Source: Convolutriloba macropyga
Taxonomy: Eukaryota
Assembly (NCBI RefSeq): GCF_964194025.1
Contig: NC_134470.1
Coordinates: 21,266,001-21,330,000 of the forward strand
Length of the DNA stretch: 64,000 bases
Reading direction: 5' to 3'
This document shows positions 10,420-18,486 of this stretch, piece by piece. The notes below the pieces were generated by a model. That model was not told the DNA's origin. It was given only the letters and a program-made list of their open reading frames with translations, and made no database searches. Position 1 is the first letter of the stretch. Every line of letters begins with the position of its first letter. A program made the translations under genes and the position numbers.

Positions 10420-13200
10420 TGGGGAATCACACCCCGCGTTTACAATCTAGGATTGGCACGTCAGTTTGTACATAAACAAATAAATATCCAAGTACAGGGA
10501 TTGTTTTCAGTCTAATGTCTATTAAAATAACTCCACATGTATTCAATATGTTTGTTCTTCAGATTCTTCGGGTTAGAGGAATCAGGATCTCTTTGCACGA
10601 CGTGTGTTCTGAATCCAGTCTTATACCAAAAGTTATGCCTCTGTAATTCGTATCTAGTGTCTGGAAGCACAACACGACTCCGTCTAGCGCTGTTGGTGAT
10701 GTTGAATTCTTTCGAAAAATCGACATTGTACCTTCCTTCCAAGATGTTACTGAAAAGCAGAAGGTCTTTAAGCACTTTAAAGTAGAGTGGTGGTAATAAG
10801 TTGGATTTGGCCAAAGCGTCCTTGTAGTCTAAATTTCCGCAAATCCTCTTCAGAACCTTTTTATTGAATTTTTCAATGATTTCGAAATTCGTTTTTTTAG
10901 TTCCCAGCATTCGGATAAAGATAGCATCGACATTGATATTATTGATCGCTATAGGTCGGCTTTAATCTTGGTGCAAATGATCGTACTTCTTCTCAACCGA
11001 AAGAACGATTTTCTGGCTATTTCAACTCTTTCTTCCACATGCTCGTTCCAGATTAGTGATTCATCCATGAACAAGCCAACGTCACGAACCAGGGTTTTGT
11101 GGTTTGAATTTTTTCCATCCATAATAAAACAAAAATCTTCTAGGGTGTTCTTATTTCTACTGTACTGAAATTCGCTAATAGAACTTTTTTTTCAAATTGA
11201 ATAGTAGATGGTTTTGCACACTCCAGCTATGAAGGGCTTGTAAGTCGGTTTGCTGTTTTTCTAAGGTTACTTGTTCAGGTCTGCCATTGTAAAGCGGTTT
11301 TAAATCATCAGCAAATAGTAAGGCTAACGTTGAGGAGATCGTTTATGTACATCAGAAAAAGAAATGGTCCCAATACCGATCCCTGTGGTACTCCAGATGT
11401 TACAATTCGCTCAATTGATAACTGGTCACCTATTCGCACGTTCGGTGTTCTTCCTAATAATTAGTCTTGTATCAATTTAATTAAGCCTTGAAGATTGGAA
11501 TTTGAAGTAACTTTTTCATTAGGATACTTTGTCATAGTTTGTCAAACGCTTTGGAAAAGCCAAATAAAATAAATAAATTAACAGATCCTCTCGAGTTCAG
11601 GTGTGAGTAAATATGAGATAAACTGTATAGTAATTGTAGTACAAAAGAAAGTCTTGGCCTAAAACCAAATTGGAAATTGATTATACCATCAGCAAACGCA
11701 ATGTAAATTGGTGCAAAGGTAAGTTTTTCAAATGATTTTGCGACAGTGTTTAATAGAGTAACTGGCCTATAGTTCGAAACTTTTCTTTTGTCACCATCTT
11801 TGTATATCGAACTGACAATACCAGTCTTCCAAGCAGACGGATATTTGCGCAATCGCTTGATATTACAGAACGAGTTTTTAGGGGACGTAGCTATTGATCC
11901 CCGCATCTTTTAAACAATATGGGTGGTATCGAATCTTGACATCTGCTCTTCGAGATGTTAAGTGACTTAAACTCTGTTTTGATTAAATCTTCCGTAATTG
12001 AGTTGTCATTTCCCCCAAAATTATGCTGTTCGCTTGGTTCGAAGTATTGATTACCGTCATCTGCAGTACGCAACATTCTTTCATCAATAGATTTCTGCAC
12101 TGTGTTTTCAAGCTTATTCTCATTCAGTTGTCGATCAGTTAACTGCTTTTGTATGCAGGCTAGTTTACAGCAGATTTCATTTATATCATCGTGTCCATCT
12201 CTGAGAAGTTTTTTACCACTCTCTTTGCAGTCTTTACAGAGCAAAATAAGCCCTGAAGTTCTTTGCAGACATCTAAGGACACTTGTAGCAATGCTGGAAC
12301 AATCACAGGCGTCTTACCAGCAACCACATTTAAAACACCAAACCGATCTATCTTTGCATTCAAGATTACAGGTACCACATGGGTACTTCGTTGATTGAGT
12401 TTTACCTTTATCTCCCAATTTTAAAGAGTTCAAGAGTACAAGCCCCTTCCTACCAGTTAAGGTTGCGAAGGCACTCCAACAAAAACAAACAACACAATCA
12501 AACAATCAAAATTTACCTATTGAGATGTTTCGCTCTTTCTCTCTGCTTCTTTGATGGCTTGTTTTTCTTTGGCTTGCACCGTTTCGACCTCTTCTTCTTG
12601 TCACTCTTGTAAAGGCTTTTCAAGTTCCTTCTGTGCCGCCAAATAGTTGAGAACAATCGGGCTTCAAGTTCAGTGGACGGGTGAGTTTGTTTTAGGTCGT
12701 CTAAAACTTTGAAATCTTTACTCTTGCGATGGGATAGAAGGTTTGATTTAACGTCTAATATGTTAATTTTGCTCTCCAATAATTTGCGAAAAATGCGAGG
12801 GGCTCCTTCACGTCTACAATACACAACGGCTTCGATTCGATGACTGAATTCACGCAGTATTTCGAGTAACTTTTCAACACTTATGGCCCTGTAGTTGTTG
12901 CTTTTATGTTTGTTTATCGAATTACTGATAGCGTCGTGCCAAATTATAACTGTTTTCTGGCAAATATACCCTGTCCTCTCAGTAGAGTTTGTAACACCTT
13001 CAATGGGTTGTTAGCGTTCTCGTTGAAGCTGAGCCCTCCAAGACTGTAACTTCTGCCAACTAATTCACTTCTGAGTTTGTAGGGTATCCTTTTGATTGTA
13101 GCATGCAGCGAGCTTGCACCAATTATGTAAACCATAAATGCCCGCCTCTAAAATCCTTTTCACGAAAAGGGCTCTCAATAATCCGGTCTATATAATAATG
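10420..13200 (-). mobile_element. Degenerate LINE (CR1/L2-like): SGNH-like ORF, PHD finger plus coiled coil, RT; no APE endonuclease visible
   Basis: 13135-12513: VYIIGASSL..SLGGLS..WHDAISNS (SGNH-like). 12390-12225: CGTC..VWCFKC..CDC..LLCKDC (PHD-like). 12000-10460: [57 protein letters not shown]. Confidence 0.88.
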
Positions 13201-13402
13201 AAATAGGAATGACTCGGGGCGCAGAACTATCAGGTGAACTGAAAGTGAAGTTGGATTTTTTAGAAATCAGTTCATATGTACAACAATTCTATGAATGTTT
13301 TTTCTAACAATAAGAGTCAACATTTAAAATTAACCAGTATCCTGAAGGCTTAATAATTGCTGAATATTTTGAGTGTAAATTTTAGAAAGTAAATGTCACG
13401 CA

Positions 13403-14998
13403 ATGGACAGTTTGCTTGCTTTACAGACAGAAGTCCTCCGAAAGACGCGAGAGGGAGAGCAATCACAGCAGGATAAATCACGAAGTGATCATTTGCAGTT
13501 TAAAAACCAAAGCAAAAGTCCTGTTCTATCAAATCTTAATGTGAAGCAAAGAGTTGACAATGAGGACGAGTCTGACCTAGCAAACTCTAAAGCAATGTTG
13601 GAAGCGAAAAGCAGCTTCTATGATAAGATGCAAAACTCAAAAGGCATTGGCAGCGATGGTTCGAAAAGATATTTGGTCGACTTTGAGAGCAAAATACTTG
13701 AAGACCCATCAAAAGTTGAATCTTTGAGAAAGGAAGGGTCCTCAATCACGTTTGATGAAGCCGAAGAAATATTTGCCCCAGTTCATTACCAGCATATGCG
13801 CGAAAATGAAGCACGCGAACTAGGTGTCGGATACTTTGATTTTTCGTTGGATGAAGAGACAAGACAAAGTCAACTTGGAATGTTGAAAGATTTGCATAAA
13901 GAGACCAAAGCAAAACAGAACCAAAAAGACCACCAAGAGAAACAGCGACAAGCAGCTCTTCAGGAGAGACTGAATAAGATTAGAGCGAAACGTAATTTAC
14001 CGCTGGTTAAATCTGACGTGGACTGTGACGAGAAATTGCCACTGGATAAGGATGAAACGATGGAACGGGAGATCAACAATGAAATTGAGCAGAATCGATT
14101 AGAGAACAAGTCGAATGCACTTAGCGATAAGAGAGAATGGGATAGTAGGAAACGGACACTTGTCGAAGTCGTGGATGAAAAACTCAAGAAGTTACGAGAC
14201 AACAGGGATCCAGATTTTGCCCCTCCCTCTTTTTACGAAGATGCAAATGAATCATCATCACCTAAGAAGTCCTGTAATTCTATAAGGAATGTTCCCGGAA
14301 CCGGTGCTTTCGTATCTTCAACTGGAAATGCAATGAAGGCGTTGGAATCAATGTATGACAACGGACCCAAAAATATGAAATCTGGGCTTGGACTGTCTAG
14401 AGATGGAGACATTGCTGGTCTTGTGATTGGCGACTCAATTCAAAAGCGAGTAATTGCGGAAAACATCAGTGATTATGTATTTGTTAGAGGTTTTGGTGGT
14501 GCAAAAGCTAAAGATCTCAGCGAACGTTTATCTTACTCCCCTTCCAGACAGATAAAGCATGTGATTTTGAGCATAGGTTTAAACGATGCCTTAGCCTGCA
14601 GTCAAGACGATCTTGAGTTTCGCGTTCATTTCAAAAAGTGTATCGATTTAGTTCATCAAAAATTTTGTCCTCAGGTATTGCAAATTGGAACTTTAACTCC
14701 TACAAGAGGCGATTCCAATCATGTCAATGTGTACGTTGAGCGAATCAATAACCTCATTAAAGCACTTTTCAATGAGTTTGTGTATGACGGGACAAGTATT
14801 CAACTGTTGGACGTGAACGCTGCGTTTCAAATGGCGATAGCTCCTATTTGCCCTGACGGAGTGCACCCATCGACGGAAGGTGTTATGGTTTTAGTGCAAT
14901 GTTACCGACAGCAATTTGAGGCATCGGGGATTGAGATCAATTGGGATCAGGAAGTGACTGTTAGAGCACCTCCCGAAAAAGAGCGGAAAAAGTTTTAA
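13403..14998 (+). CDS. CCDC174: CCDC174-like protein fused to a C-terminal SGNH/GDSL hydrolase domain (531 aa). Possible short upstream exon 13209-13233 spliced to 13386.
   Basis: CCDC174 signatures: SLLALQTEVLRK, SKAMLEAKSSFYDKM, YLVDF, PVHYQHMRENEARELGVGYFDF, KREWD, RDPDFAPPSFY. Then VIGDS / RGFGGA / SIGLND / DGVHP. Uninterrupted ORF. Confidence 0.88.
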   Translation: MDSLLALQTEVLRKTREGEQSQQDKSRSDHLQFKNQSKSPVLSNLNVKQRVDNEDESDLANSKAMLEAKSSFYDKMQNSKGIGSDGSKRYLVDFESKILEDPSKVESLRKEGSSITFDEAEEIFAPVHYQHMRENEARELGVGYFDFSLDEETRQSQLGMLKDLHKETKAKQNQKDHQEKQRQAALQERLNKIRAKRNLPLVKSDVDCDEKLPLDKDETMEREINNEIEQNRLENKSNALSDKREWDSRKRTLVEVVDEKLKKLRDNRDPDFAPPSFYEDANESSSPKKSCNSIRNVPGTGAFVSSTGNAMKALESMYDNGPKNMKSGLGLSRDGDIAGLVIGDSIQKRVIAENISDYVFVRGFGGAKAKDLSERLSYSPSRQIKHVILSIGLNDALACSQDDLEFRVHFKKCIDLVHQKFCPQVLQIGTLTPTRGDSNHVNVYVERINNLIKALFNEFVYDGTSIQLLDVNAAFQMAIAPICPDGVHPSTEGVMVLVQCYRQQFEASGIEINWDQEVTVRAPPEKERKKF

Positions 14999-15253
14999 TA
15001 AATTGCGTGTTGTAGATATTAGACAAAAATATTCCGGGATTCATGTTTTTAGTTGCAAGCCCAAATGGGAGCGGTGTTGAAAATTTAATTTAATTCATAA
15101 AACGCGATTTATCAAAAAAGGCATTGTATTCGTTTTTTCTGCTATAGAATAAATTAATTTTACGTAACTATAATCAATTTAATGGTTTCCTGAATCATGT
15201 TTGATGTTTGCAATGTTTTCTCAGATAATCTGAATAGCGATTTTCAGAAATTG

Positions 15254-16723
15254 ATGTTTTCTTTCGGAGCTAAATCAGCAGCCTCTACAACTCCTAATAC
15301 AGGTGGCCTCTTTGGAACTCTCGCTAAACCTCAGACTTCAGCTACCACTGGGTTCAGCTTCAACCCTACAACCTCTACCTCGTCTCAAACTGGAACAGGT
15401 TTGAGTTTCAATTTTGGACCCACAGCCACTACTTCGGCTTCTGGAGGCCTTTTTTTGACACAACCTGCAACGTCTTCTTCCGGAACTGGGCTGTTTGGAA
15501 CCCTCAACCCAGCCAAATCATCAGCGCCGTCTCTTTTTGGTGGATTCTCAGCCACAACAAGTACTGCAGGAACCGGTGGACTATTTGGAGCAAAGCCAGC
15601 AGGATCTGGGACGTTATTTGGTCCAACGCCAGCTAGTCAAACCACAAGCGCTCCTCAATTTAAAGGACTAGGAGGAACTGATTCGGTATCCACCACAGCC
15701 GGCCAAAATGCTCAAAACGCAGGCAGTGCAAGCCAACAACCGAAGTTAGCGAAGGAGTCGAATGTTCCTCCCGAGTTATTACAGCACGTTGATGCTCTGA
15801 AGAAACACATTGTTGAAGAGAAAAAGTACAGAGATGAAATCAGCAAAAACTCGACCGCTAAGCCGCTTTTTGAAATTCAAAGTGAAGTTTCGAATCTCCG
15901 AAATGAAACCGTAATGGCATTCAGTTTGGTTCAGAAATCATTGAATCATGCTAAGAGTATTAAAGAAGAGTTTAATCGAGAACTTAAAAATTTCGAAATG
16001 ATATCTCGGGTTAGAGATACCCCAATTGCCTTGCAAGACGCTTATCACAACCCAATTGTCTATTTTCAAGAAAAAACTAATTTCTTTCTGCAGCAAATGG
16101 TTAATTTATCTGACCAGTTGCAGTTAGTTGAAAGATTTTTCGCCGAAAGGCATGGAACGGTTACAACGGAGGATTTTGTAGCCGGCTTGCAGCAAATTAA
16201 CGATGTTTTTGTCGGCTTAGTCGGAAAGTATCAAATGTTGCAAGAACGTATGGAGCAATTAAAGGCCGAATATCTTCACTATAAAAAAACAACCCAGCAA
16301 GATTCAACAGACGTGTTCAAAAAACTGCAGAAAGACTCCTTAAATCTGAATCTGGCCTCGTTGTCACCGAGTAAATACCCTGATGTTAAAAGTATGGAAA
16401 AACGAGTGGAATTCCGTGATATCAGCAATACGAACTCGGCTGTAACTTGCACAATTGGGCCGAATTGTTTCACTGTTTCATCAACGACTGATTCAAATGC
16501 CGTAATTGGAAAAGCTGGACTTTTTGCGGGAGCAGGAAATACTACTGGTTCAGGTCTTTCATCATCAGGATTTGGCACTTCGTTATTTGGAACCCCTAAT
16601 CAATCGACGTTAGGAGGAGGATTGTTTGGAACCCAATCATCAGGACTTGGAGTTACCTTTGGAGGAACTAGTCCGGCAACGCCTGCGTCTAAGCCAGGAA
16701 CTAAACGGAATAAAAGCAAATAA
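15254..16723 (+). CDS. NUP58: FG-nucleoporin Nup58/p45 (central channel); likely start MFSFGAK at 15254
   Basis: N- and C-terminal FG/GLFG-like Thr/Ser-rich repeats flank a central coiled coil. The motifs KGLGG.D, KESNVPPELLQHVDALKKHI and DSTDVF match Nup58. TTTTCAG acceptor-like site at 15241-15247. Confidence 0.88.
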   Translation: MFSFGAKSAASTTPNTGGLFGTLAKPQTSATTGFSFNPTTSTSSQTGTGLSFNFGPTATTSASGGLFLTQPATSSSGTGLFGTLNPAKSSAPSLFGGFSATTSTAGTGGLFGAKPAGSGTLFGPTPASQTTSAPQFKGLGGTDSVSTTAGQNAQNAGSASQQPKLAKESNVPPELLQHVDALKKHIVEEKKYRDEISKNSTAKPLFEIQSEVSNLRNETVMAFSLVQKSLNHAKSIKEEFNRELKNFEMISRVRDTPIALQDAYHNPIVYFQEKTNFFLQQMVNLSDQLQLVERFFAERHGTVTTEDFVAGLQQINDVFVGLVGKYQMLQERMEQLKAEYLHYKKTTQQDSTDVFKKLQKDSLNLNLASLSPSKYPDVKSMEKRVEFRDISNTNSAVTCTIGPNCFTVSSTTDSNAVIGKAGLFAGAGNTTGSGLSSSGFGTSLFGTPNQSTLGGGLFGTQSSGLGVTFGGTSPATPASKPGTKRNKSK

Positions 16724-17251
16724 ATTTGTGTGTATGGATTCTTTTGTATTAGGTTTGAATTGATGTTTTGTTTTCATGAAACAATTATTACTCTTAAACG
16801 AAGTTTGTAATATCTATTGGTTTGTTTTCGTTTAATTGATCTGCAATTAGGGACAATTTAAGACATGCCATACACAAGACAGTTCAATGACCACCGTATT
16901 TTAATTGGCCGAAGAGTTTTGCTCCCTTGCGCTTTAATATGGCCCTATCAAGTATCATTAACGTACATAATTTGTGCAAACCTCTCAGTATGATTCAACA
17001 AAAGTAGCAGAGTAGTTTTCCTTAAAAATCAGATGACTATACTTTCCTCTCTGAAAGAATTTGGATTATTTCTGGATAATGTTTTAAAAATAAAATCCGT
17101 TTAGAGTTGGCAGAGTTTCGTGTTGCATTCGAGCCCGTTTGTTCCGGTAGTTTTCAATGTATATCTTTAAAGTCAGTGTGCTATAGATTGTACTTGACAA
17201 TTTCAGATTTGTGTGTTGAGTATACAGCAACAGCTACCAACATCCGCCAAT

Positions 17252-18486
17252 ATGTCTGAGTTAGAGTCAATGGTACAGGTGGAGAAATCCTTCCAGAAGC
17301 AGCACTCATACACTGTCTCTAAGGAGATGGTCATCAAGGGCATCCACAGGAGGAAGAGGTGGCACAAGGCCATTGGACTCGGATTCAAGACTCCCAAGGA
17401 AGCCATTAGGCATGTACTCTCGTTTAAATTCACTGTCCAGTACGGAGAGATGACACGAAATTCAAAATTATTGACGACCTTGCTCCTACATCAAAATCTA
17501 TTCGTGCTCTTAATGATTGAACGAACACTGTTGAAATGACTTACCAAGTCTTTGTCAGTTTTTGTTGTTTTCAAGTGAAACAAAGTTGATTGCTATAGGT
17601 CATATTGCTAATTAGTCACCGAACCCCGAGCCCTTAAGAACAGAGAAATCAAATTTTTGAAAGTTCTGGCAGATTTTCGAGGCGTTGCATATGATCTCTA
17701 TTTGAAGCACCATAAATAGTTCTTGCAATATATACACAGTCAAAGACCGCATCTATTAAATTTGGTGTCCACGTGGTTTTTACTAGGTGATATTTAAGGC
17801 TGCATTAGCATTGGAGTGCTATATTTGTTTACCACCTTTTGCATGCTGAAAGATCATGCATATAGTTAGGCGATGAAAGTGTGTGTGAATGTGTTTGTTT
17901 TGTAGGGGACAATACATTGACAAGAAGTGTCCCTTTACTGGACAAGTGAGCATCAGAGGCAGGATCCTCAAGGGTGAAGTGAAAAAGATGAAGATGCACA
18001 GGACCATCGTCATCAGAAGGGACTACCTCCACTGGGTCAGTAAGAAATAGTGATCCTATCTACCCTTTCACCTCAGTCATCTCAAAATTGGTCATCCTGT
18101 TGCTTCTGTTTTAACAAAGTTGCTTCTGTTTTTCTGTGGTCGCTAATGTCATTTTTTGGAATCCTGAAAAACTGAATGGAATGTCTCATTTCGTGCGCTT
18201 CGTGTCTAAGAAAGAATTGTCCAAGTGATACAGAAATTGATGCCAGTTCGCAGCTTATTGAAAAATGCCTTCTATAAAGATCCGTGTTTAGGTGCGAAAG
18301 TACAAGCGATACGAGCGAAGACACAAAAACATGTCAGTTCATTGCTCGCCCTGTTTCCGAGATGTTGAGATTGGCGATATAGTGACTGTGGGTGAATGTC
18401 GACCCCTCTCCAAAACTGTTAGATTCAATGTGATCAAAGTGACGAAGCCAGGAGGCAGTGGAAAGAAAGTGTTCTCCAAGTTCTAA
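17252..18486 (+). CDS. RPS11: 40S ribosomal protein S11 (uS17); exons 17252-17409, 17906-18035, 18292-18486 (483 nt, 160 aa)
   Basis: [107 protein letters not shown]. Splice phases are consistent. Confidence 0.97.

What the first reader, a model, noticed from the sequence alone, without database searches (positions are those of the whole stretch)
13403..14998. CCDC174 fused in frame to an intact SGNH/GDSL hydrolase domain
Seen: one open frame carries the CCDC174 motifs up to RDPDFAPPSFY (~14235), a ~60-aa linker, then all four SGNH blocks: GDS (14429-14437), RGFGG, GLND (14576-14587) and DGVH (14855-14866). The Ser-Asp-His triad and oxyanion residues are therefore intact. Established: CCDC174 is an eIF4A3/exon-junction-complex-associated protein not known to me to carry an enzyme domain. 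This style of SGNH domain (VIGDS..R..PGA..GxND..DGxH) is typical of CR1/L2 LINE ORF1 esterases and shares its fold with the RNA-binding OSK domain of Oskar. Inference: a lineage-specific chimeric gene, plausibly from domestication of a retrotransposon ORF1 esterase, coupling an mRNP factor to an esterase/deacylase or RNA/lipid-binding module. An unbroken ORF amid heavily decayed TEs suggests purifying selection.
Basis: partly seen in the sequence, partly recalled or inferred. Interest (0 to 1): 0.88.

Follow-up and report, generated by a model that had tools for sequence, protein, structure and literature searches.

The report
CCDC174 fused to LINE-type esterase
In this acoel worm and at least three related acoels, the only copy of the splicing-associated gene CCDC174 carries an intact esterase domain whose nearest relatives are retrotransposon (LINE ORF1) esterases; the fusion is conserved and looks like a transposon domain taken over by a host gene, but its expression and activity are untested.

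Summary
Window 13403-14998(+) is one 531-aa ORF with a CCDC174/DUF4078 part, a roughly 60-aa linker and an SGNH/GDSL domain in which all four catalytic blocks are intact.

- **Real gene.** It is single-copy at DNA and protein level. It is the only CCDC174 homologue in the 1.18-Gb genome, and contigs of four read sets reproduce it without change.
- **Conserved.** The same fusion occurs in Symsagittifera roscoffensis (68% identity, same Nup58-like and RPS11 neighbours) and in two further assemblies. One of these has a 1,614-bp GT..AG insert inside the esterase domain; removing it restores a colinear protein.
- **Under selection.** Synonymous sites are saturated (pS 0.80-0.93). The esterase domain has pN 0.12-0.16 and is more conserved (80% identity) than the CCDC174 part (62%) or the neighbouring nucleoporin (69%).
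- **Likely origin.** In 1.84 billion representative proteins, the only relatives outside the fusion are ORF1-like esterases of about 300 aa (E down to 1e-28). Those I could check sit upstream of endonuclease/RT ORFs, and the genome holds hundreds of such LINE copies at 22-34% identity.

A tree places the fusion among these esterases, but the nesting is not statistically secured (AU p 0.22). No RNA data exist, and the substrate and role are unknown. I rate it a new variant of transposon-domain domestication.

The parts
13403..14998 (+). Whole fusion ORF, 531 aa, intronless
   Evidence: orthologues
13403..14236 (+). CCDC174 part (aa 1-278), ending in the conserved RDPDFAPP motif; the GRSR motif (PF25449) of canonical CCDC174 is absent
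13775..13990 (+). DUF4078 (PF13300) match, aa 125-196
14237..14428 (+). Linker, aa 279-342, predicted disordered. Up to about aa 316 it is shared with an SGNH-less acoel-type CCDC174 (P0005). From about aa 322-330 it is homologous to the pre-esterase segment of ORF1 proteins. The junction is therefore near 14350-14390.
   Evidence: pN/pS 0.27-0.38 uncorrected
14447..14881 (+). Lipase_GDSL_2 (PF13472) match, aa 349-493; the folded SGNH domain spans about aa 336-510
14429..14437 (+). Block I GDS (nucleophile Ser345)
   Evidence: invariant in alignment A2
14486..14500 (+). Block II RGFGG (oxyanion Gly)
14576..14587 (+). Block III GLND (Gly392, Asn394)
   Evidence: invariant in A2
14855..14866 (+). 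Block V DGVH (Asp485, His488)
   Evidence: His invariant and Asp nearly invariant in A2
14997..15002 (+). AATAAA overlapping the stop codon; there is no AATAAA inside the ORF
15197..16723 (+). Nup58-like FG nucleoporin, the syntenic neighbour; 69% identical to the S. roscoffensis neighbour
17213..17539 (+). ORF that I read by eye as an RPS11 exon (not checked against Pfam); RPS11 is the third gene of the shared gene order

Best explanation
This is a genuine host gene of a group of acoel worms. The sole CCDC174 orthologue is a coiled-coil, spliceosome-associated RNA-binding factor. At its C-terminus it acquired the esterase domain of a non-LTR retrotransposon ORF1 protein, without that protein's own N-terminal region or ORF2, and the chimera was then fixed.

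Shown here:
- One unbroken ORF in four genomes, with shared gene order in the one relative whose neighbours could be read.
- A single copy in this genome.
- Strong purifying selection, strongest on the esterase domain.
- Invariant Ser/Gly/Asn/Asp/His catalytic residues.
- A confident SGNH fold.
- Nearest relatives that are retroelement ORF1 esterases.

Inferred:
- The protein works as a CCDC174 that carries, on a flexible tether of about 60 aa, a catalytically competent short-chain acyl/acetyl esterase. Like the ZfL2-1 ORF1 esterase, this domain may also bind acidic phospholipids.
- This would bring an esterase or lipid-binding activity to CCDC174-NRDE2-U1 snRNP complexes.
- The CCDC174 coiled coils would take over the multimerising role of the lost ORF1 N-terminal region (a coiled coil in ZfL2-1 ORF1p).

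My odds: real and selected fusion 0.9; TE origin 0.75; catalytically active 0.6. The substrate is unknown.
For: The ORF and its domains are. It is the only CCDC174 in the genome, and NRDE2 is also present. The esterase stretch is single-copy by protein (next best 22-34% identity) and by DNA. Read-set contigs match it exactly.

Orthologues with the same architecture are P0002 (S. roscoffensis LOC134855271), P0003 and P0004. The S. roscoffensis gene is intronless and followed by Nup58-like and RPS11 genes. In L025, removing a 1,614-bp GT..AG segment restores a colinear 523-aa protein with DGVHPS intact.

On selection, NG86 dS is undefined or above 1.8. pS is 0.80-0.93, against pN 0.12-0.16 for the SGNH part and 0.24-0.32 for the CCDC174 part. 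The neighbouring nucleoporin is 69% identical, against 80% for the SGNH domain.

An exhaustive phmmer search found 33 hits. The non-fusion hits are ORF1-like proteins of about 290-340 aa, with E 1e-28 to 1e-20. The P0036/P0065 cluster lies upstream of Exo_endo_phos + RVT_1. P0034 and P0037 lie upstream of an AlkB-like ORF and RVT_1. The best own-genome hits are followed by LINE ORF2 homologues.

The AF2 model of aa 301-531 has pLDDT 89.6. Foldseek returns SGNH hydrolases; the ZfL2-1 ORF1 esterase (4c1b) has the highest identity among the listed matches, at 22-23%. In the tree, the fusion clade has 100/100 support and sits among ORF1 esterase clades.
Against: No RNA evidence exists: the four runs that hold the stretch behave as DNA. 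Nesting within TE esterases is not significant (AU p 0.223). The outgroup was only two SGNH+TSP1 sequences from the same assembly, and the sister TE lineage is unresolved. Retroelement linkage was verified for only three of the outside hit clusters and for the own-genome copies; P0059 and P0062 lie on short contigs without context. At profile level, the family is as close to a bacterial 'PAF-AH-like' SGNH (2hsj, E 5e-23) as to ZfL2-1 (E 6e-17). Catalysis, substrate and any link to splicing are inference only.
Confidence: 0.75

Rival explanations
1. The fusion is real and selected, but the SGNH domain is used non-catalytically. It would act as a binding module for acidic phospholipids or membranes (as shown for the ZfL2-1 esterase) or for RNA (as in the OSK domain of Oskar).
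For: [quoted passage not shown] Relatives P0035 and P0036 give weak OSK (PF17182) matches at E about 5e-6. CCDC174 is an RNP protein (PMC10351895).
Against: All catalytic residues are invariant across four species despite saturated synonymous divergence, whereas OSK, as I recall, lacks the catalytic triad. The fusion protein itself gives no OSK match. The ZfL2-1 esterase did not bind oligo(A) RNA (PMC3905857).
Confidence: 0.15
2. The esterase domain was not taken from a retrotransposon. It came from a cellular SGNH gene or from a bacterium by horizontal transfer, or the TE esterases and the fusion domain share a cellular ancestor.
For: The AU test does not reject a tree with all TE-type esterases together and the fusion outside them (p 0.223). 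The family profile matches a bacterial SGNH protein (2hsj) better than ZfL2-1. The best structural matches are PAF-AH Ib and bacterial GDSL proteins.
Against: Single-sequence phmmer over 1.84 billion representatives returned only 33 hits at E <= 0.001. Besides the fusion orthologues these are ORF1-like proteins and shorter proteins of unchecked context, and no hit was shown to be cellular or bacterial, although the hits' taxonomy is not given. The best PDB sequence match of the domain alone has E 0.09. The genome carries hundreds of LINE esterase copies as potential donors. A second single-copy SGNH gene of the same type exists in the genome.
Confidence: 0.1
3. The long ORF is not expressed as one protein. 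CCDC174 and the esterase would be made separately (internal start, early polyadenylation or splicing), or the 3' half is untranslated.
For: There is no RNA evidence. One variant signal, ATTAAA, lies at 14756.
Against: The linker is kept in frame without stops in four genomes and evolves under constraint (pN/pS 0.27-0.38 uncorrected, NG86 omega 0.06-0.19). The other frames are closed. There is no AATAAA before the stop codon. NCBI's gene model for S. roscoffensis is a single 528-aa protein.
Confidence: 0.05

Closest known systems
Esterase domain of non-LTR retrotransposon ORF1 proteins (e.g. zebrafish ZfL2-1 ORF1p, PDB 4c1b; CR1, L2, RTE/RTEX and Penelope-like elements)
   Same: It is an SGNH fold with an intact catalytic site and an upstream coiled-coil region. 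The nearest sequence relatives are ORF1 esterases upstream of APE/RT ORFs. 4c1b has the highest identity among the listed structural matches.
   Different: It is single-copy and syntenic with no ORF2. It is fused to a host protein instead of the ORF1 N-terminal region and evolves much more slowly than the TE copies. It is only 22-23% identical to ZfL2-1, so it belongs to a different ORF1 lineage.
Canonical CCDC174 (human, vertebrate and echinoderm; partner of NRDE2, U1 snRNA and EIF4A3)
   Same: It has the DUF4078 core and conserved motifs (LEAK..Y, LVDFE, VHYQ, GVGYF, REWD, R.P.FAPP) and is the single orthologue in the genome.
   Different: It lacks the GRSR motif PF25449. The low-complexity C-terminal tail is replaced by an enzyme domain. 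No enzyme domain was found in any other CCDC174 homologue retrieved.
PAF acetylhydrolase Ib catalytic subunits and sialate O-acetylesterases
   Same: These are the best structural matches (Foldseek E about 1e-7, TM 0.6-0.7) and also strong profile matches. This suggests short-acyl or acetyl ester substrates.
   Different: Identity is only 14-19%, there is no detectable single-sequence similarity, and the domain context is different.
Host exons and genes derived from LINE ORF1 (L1 ORF1-derived exons, PMC12129022; L1TD1, from my own knowledge)
   Same: A LINE ORF1 segment became part of a host protein under selection.
   Different: Those cases derive from the L1-type RNA-binding ORF1. Here the esterase-type ORF1 domain is retained with its catalytic residues. 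My one literature search listed no paper reporting a domesticated ORF1 esterase.
OSK domain of Oskar
   Same: It is an SGNH-like fold placed in an RNP-organising protein.
   Different: OSK lacks the catalytic residues (my own knowledge). Here they are all intact, and Pfam OSK does not match the fusion protein.

Membership tests
SGNH/GDSL hydrolase superfamily | Block I GDS(x) with nucleophile Ser | tested here: met
   GDS at aa 343-345; Ser invariant in 24-sequence alignment A2 and in all four orthologues
SGNH/GDSL hydrolase superfamily | Block II Gly and block III GxND (oxyanion hole) | tested here: met
   RGFGG at aa 362-366 and GLND at aa 392-395; G392 and N394 invariant
SGNH/GDSL hydrolase superfamily | Block V DxxH (acid and base of the triad) | tested here: met
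   DGVH at aa 485-488; His invariant, Asp nearly invariant
SGNH/GDSL hydrolase superfamily | Three-layer alpha/beta/alpha fold | tested here: met
   AF2 model pLDDT 89.6, pTM 0.86; 102 PDB matches at E <= 0.001, and all natural proteins among the 50 listed are SGNH hydrolases; Pfam PF13472 above cut-off
SGNH/GDSL hydrolase superfamily | Hydrolytic activity on esters | not testable with these tools
   Needs recombinant protein, p-nitrophenyl esters and an S345A control
CCDC174 (PF13300 DUF4078 family) | DUF4078 domain above Pfam cut-off and conserved family motifs | tested here: met
   66.3 bits against cut-off 25; 25 invariant columns with metazoan CCDC174
CCDC174 (PF13300 DUF4078 family) | GRSR motif (PF25449) upstream of DUF4078 | tested here: not met
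   No PF25449 match in the four acoel-type proteins scanned or in P0014 and P0028, whereas it is present in the echinoderm proteins P0006 and P0007; precomputed Pfam lists it for the fish, tunicate and bryozoan hits; the region is deleted in alignment A3
CCDC174 (PF13300 DUF4078 family) | Orthologue rather than extra paralogue | tested here: met
   Only one match in the 1.18-Gb genome
CCDC174 (PF13300 DUF4078 family) | Binds U1 snRNA and 5' splice sites with NRDE2; interacts with EIF4A3 | not testable with these tools
   Known for mouse and human (PMC10351895, PMC13270137). An NRDE-2 gene exists in this genome, which is context only.
Retrotransposon ORF1 esterase (as a current mobile-element gene) | Lies upstream of an endonuclease/RT ORF in a multi-copy element | tested here: not met
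   Single copy; the next gene, 199 bp downstream, is a nucleoporin; gene order is shared with S. roscoffensis. It is therefore not a TE gene today.
Retrotransposon ORF1 esterase (by descent) | Nearest sequence relatives are ORF1 esterases | tested here: met
Retrotransposon ORF1 esterase (by descent) | Phylogenetically nested within retroelement esterases | tested here: inconclusive
   The best tree places it inside a polytomy of ORF1 clades, but the AU test does not reject placement outside them (p 0.223)
Retrotransposon ORF1 esterase (by descent) | Transposon-specific conserved positions (H191 and S228 of ZfL2-1 ORF1p, PMC3905857) | not tested
   I obtained no residue-level alignment to 4c1b
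OSK domain (PF17182) | SGNH-like fold without catalytic residues; Pfam OSK match | tested here: not met
   No OSK match at E <= 1; the catalytic residues are intact

The most novel reading that the evidence does not exclude
Acoels turned a LINE ORF1 esterase into a working enzymatic arm of the CCDC174-NRDE2 nuclear RNP machinery. It would act in one of two ways. It could act on an acylated or acetylated RNA, protein or lipid ligand at U1 snRNP and 5' splice-site complexes. Or it could work as a decoy or restriction module that recognises what LINE ORF1 esterases recognise, steering nuclear surveillance onto the very abundant esterase-bearing LINEs of these genomes. A second single-copy, conserved gene with the same type of domain (G000:C7:54096650-54098644) hints that such captures may be recurrent in this lineage.
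Probability: 0.12. Interest if true: 0.85.

Novelty: new variant of a known kind. Interest (0 to 1): 0.55.

Why it matters
The role of the esterase in esterase-type LINE ORF1 proteins is still unclear; lipids and membranes have been suggested (PMC3905857). A host gene that has kept this domain catalytically intact under strong selection, attached to a known U1-snRNA/5' splice-site factor, gives a tractable single-copy setting for asking what the domain binds or cleaves. It would also be the first CCDC174 with an enzyme domain and, as far as my limited literature search shows, the first domesticated esterase-type ORF1. The scope is narrow: it covers a group of acoels, and function and expression are untested.

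Tried and rejected
- **RNA evidence.** The look-up of sequencing runs found no RNA run. The four holders are DNA-like contigs spanning intergenic DNA, so transcription across the junction could not be tested. S. roscoffensis loci came from a tool whose loci cannot be used for run searches.
- **Bacterial relatives.** The search for related loci with alignment A2 against bacterial and archaeal genomes failed because no stretch was conserved enough. I therefore made no direct bacterial scan and had no bacterial outgroup.
- **PDB sequence searches.** The domain alone gave nothing significant (best E 0.09). A LINE ORF1 (P0036) matched ZfL2-1 only at E 0.62, so the transposon-specific residues could not be checked.
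- **NG86 dN/dS.** dS is undefined for most pairs because synonymous sites are saturated. I report uncorrected pN and pS instead.
- **AU test for nesting.** Inconclusive.
- **Full-length AF2 model.** Low confidence (mean pLDDT 57), so it gives no information on contacts between the two halves.
- **'TE that captured CCDC174'.** Rejected because the gene is single-copy with shared gene order.
- **Retrogene origin.** The intronless state is not evidence for this: neighbouring genes and NRDE2 are also single open frames here.
- **Bacterial promoter/terminator scan.** Uninformative for a eukaryote.
- **Earlier scan notes near this place.** They concern other elements and did not bear on this finding.

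Full report
**Observation.** Window 13403-14998(+) is a single 531-aa ORF.
- Pfam finds DUF4078/CCDC174 at aa 125-196 (66 bits, cut-off 25) and Lipase_GDSL_2 at aa 349-493 (41.8 bits, cut-off 32.9).
- The two other frames across the junction are closed by stops.
- An AATAAA overlaps the stop codon at 14997, and none lies inside the ORF.

**Is it an assembly artefact or a recent TE insertion? No.**
- Contigs from four public read sets (one study, DNA-like) cover 13160-17900 with no differences and no joints.
- In the 1.18-Gb genome, the DNA of 14400-14990 occurs once.
- The protein domain matches itself at 100%. The next matches are only 22-34% identical: 150 scored places, many of them multi-copy ORFs of 189 aa or about 320 aa.
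- The CCDC174 half also matches only this locus, so this is the sole CCDC174 gene of the organism.

**Relatives.** A search of 5.8 billion proteins found the same two-domain architecture in three further proteins:
- P0002, Symsagittifera roscoffensis 'uncharacterized protein LOC134855271' (528 aa, 68% identity).
- P0003 (523 aa, 64% identity).
- P0004 (60% identity; the gene call is truncated).

The window is therefore from another acoel. In S. roscoffensis the gene is intronless and followed on the same strand by a Nup58-like nucleoporin and RPS11. The window has the same nucleoporin at 15197-16723 and, by my reading of its translation, an RPS11 exon at 17213-17539.

In P0004's locus (L025) the last 77 aa lie 1.6 kb downstream in the same frame. 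Removing a 1,614-bp GT..AG segment (L025:5747-7360) gives a 523-aa protein colinear with the others and with DGVHPS intact. I read this as an intron, or an intronised insertion, gained inside the esterase domain of a host gene.

All other CCDC174 homologues retrieved lack any SGNH domain. These come from echinoderms, fish, a tunicate, a bryozoan, a nematomorph and unnamed assemblies.

The acoel-type proteins also lack the GRSR motif (PF25449) of canonical CCDC174.

**Selection.** Between the window, S. roscoffensis and P0003's species, synonymous sites are saturated. NG86 dS is undefined or above 1.8, and pS is 0.80-0.93. Non-synonymous divergence and identity by region:

| Region | pN | Identity, window vs S. 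roscoffensis |
|---|---|---|
| SGNH domain | 0.12-0.16 | 80% |
| Linker | 0.20-0.26 | 68% |
| CCDC174 part | 0.24-0.32 | 62% |

The syntenic nucleoporin is 69% identical. The esterase domain is therefore the best-conserved part of the gene. The linker is kept in frame under constraint, which argues for translation as one protein.

**The domain.**
- Ser345, Gly392, Asn394 and His488 are invariant, and Gly343, Asp344, Asp485 and Gly486 nearly so, in a 24-sequence alignment of fusion and ORF1 esterases.
- All are identical in the four orthologues.
- An AF2 model of aa 301-531 is confident (pLDDT 89.6, pTM 0.86).
- Foldseek returns SGNH hydrolases: PAF-AH Ib subunits, bacterial GDSL proteins and sialate O-acetylesterases at E about 1e-7. 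The ZfL2-1 retrotransposon ORF1 esterase (4c1b) has the highest identity among the listed matches, at 22-23%.
- The full-length model is poor (pLDDT 57), with long helices in the CCDC174 part and a disordered linker at aa 278-353.

**Origin of the domain.** An exhaustive phmmer search of 1.84 billion representative proteins gave only 33 hits. After the fusion orthologues come proteins of about 290-340 aa whose C-terminal 200 aa match at E 1e-28 to 1e-20 (28-37% identity). All ten that I scanned with Pfam carry GDSL domains, and some give weak OSK matches. Context could be read for three clusters:
- P0065 (the P0036 cluster) lies directly upstream of ORFs with Exo_endo_phos and RVT_1 on a 5.4-kb marine contig.
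- P0034 and P0037 lie upstream of an AlkB-like ORF and an RVT_1 ORF on 5.2-kb contigs.

In the window's own genome, the best SGNH matches are decayed copies. Nearly all that I examined are followed downstream by sequence homologous to that LINE ORF2. L010 shows an intact 300-aa ORF1 esterase followed by a second long ORF that matches the N-terminal part of that ORF2 weakly. L016 has an esterase ORF followed by an ORF with a Cys/His-rich motif that I read by eye as PHD-like, the combination named in the title of a cited CR1 study (reference list seen).

Homology to ORF1 proteins begins at about aa 322-330, and similarity to an SGNH-less acoel-type CCDC174 (P0005) ends at about aa 316. The junction therefore lies near 14350-14390. 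Only the esterase domain plus a short preceding segment was captured, not the ORF1 N-terminal region.

**Phylogeny.** I built a maximum-likelihood tree of 44 SGNH domains, rooted on two SGNH+TSP1 proteins from small contigs of the same assembly.
- The three full-length fusion domains form a 100/100 clade on a stem of 1.0 substitutions per site, with short internal branches.
- The clade sits inside an unresolved polytomy of ORF1 esterase clades.
- The AU test does not reject a tree with all ORF1-type rows together and the fusion outside them (p 0.223).
- At profile level, the family is no closer to ZfL2-1 than to a bacterial SGNH protein.

TE origin thus rests mainly on two points: only ORF1-type proteins are detectably similar by sequence, and donors are extremely abundant in these genomes. 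The LINE clade (CR1, L2 or another) was not determined.

**Mechanism.** In mouse ES cells CCDC174 binds U1 snRNA and 5' splice sites together with NRDE2 and promotes use of weak 5' splice sites (PMC10351895). It also interacts with EIF4A3 and affects alternative splicing in oocytes (PMC13270137). An NRDE-2 gene is present in this genome. [quoted passage not shown]

My best reading is a CCDC174 that carries a catalytically competent short-acyl esterase or lipid-binding module on a flexible tether. The substrate is unknown. A purely binding role, or an anti-LINE role, is not excluded.

**Verdict.** This is a conserved chimeric host gene specific to a group of acoels. It is very probably a domesticated LINE ORF1 esterase domain, and it is annotated only as 'uncharacterized' in the one named relative. 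It is a new variant of a known kind (host capture of a TE domain), of moderate interest.

Noticed in passing
G000:C7:54096650-54098644 (-), locus L033:1141-3135: A second single-copy long open frame (665 aa) carries a LINE-type SGNH domain at aa 409-545 and an N-terminal 400 aa with no Pfam match. It is conserved at 73%, 56% and 52% identity in three other assemblies (P0075-P0077). It may be a second host gene built on the same kind of esterase. A further 815-aa frame with an SGNH match lies at G000:C7:21601440-21601859 and was not examined.
   Followed up: partly
Contigs of P0034 and P0037 (ENA ERZ21818094, about 5.2 kb) and L046:97-2259: These are retroelements with three ORFs: an ORF1 esterase, a 168-177-aa AlkB-like 2OG-Fe(II) oxygenase (PF13532), and an RVT_1 ORF of up to 1,074 aa. 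I do not know of an AlkB-like ORF described in a LINE-like element.
   Followed up: no
L028:1-12176 (ENA ERZ25071281, 13-kb contig at 1x): A tandem array of units of about 3.4 kb. Each unit has an intronless, SGNH-less CCDC174 copy (339-355 aa, 48% identical to the window's) plus a 175-bp satellite block. The organism is unknown, and the contig label suggests a circular or low-coverage assembly.
   Followed up: partly
window 13403-17539; G000:C16:43778989-43780005: The CCDC174-SGNH gene, the Nup58-like gene and the NRDE-2 match (within a 1,025-aa open frame) are all uninterrupted here, with only 199 bp between the first two genes. RPS11 appears split in the window but is a single 160-aa ORF in S. 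roscoffensis. This suggests many intron-poor, tightly packed genes in these acoels.
   Followed up: no
L037 (G000:C3634:3368-7030) and L038 (G000:C761:2323-5784): Open frames combining an SGNH domain with a thrombospondin type 1 repeat, on small contigs of the assembly. One has an unusual amino-acid make-up, so they may come from another organism such as the symbiont or prey. I used them as the tree outgroup.
   Followed up: partly
window 12070-13190: The stretch upstream of the gene is covered by many short, very high-depth, slightly divergent contigs in all four read sets, so it is repeat/TE sequence abutting the gene's 5' flank. The unique contig starts at about 13160.
   Followed up: no
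window 14402-14404 (aa 334): The window encodes Ser at aa 334 (GLGLSRDG), whereas P0001, from another assembly of apparently the same species, has Pro, as do the three orthologues. This is probably a haplotype difference.
   Followed up: no
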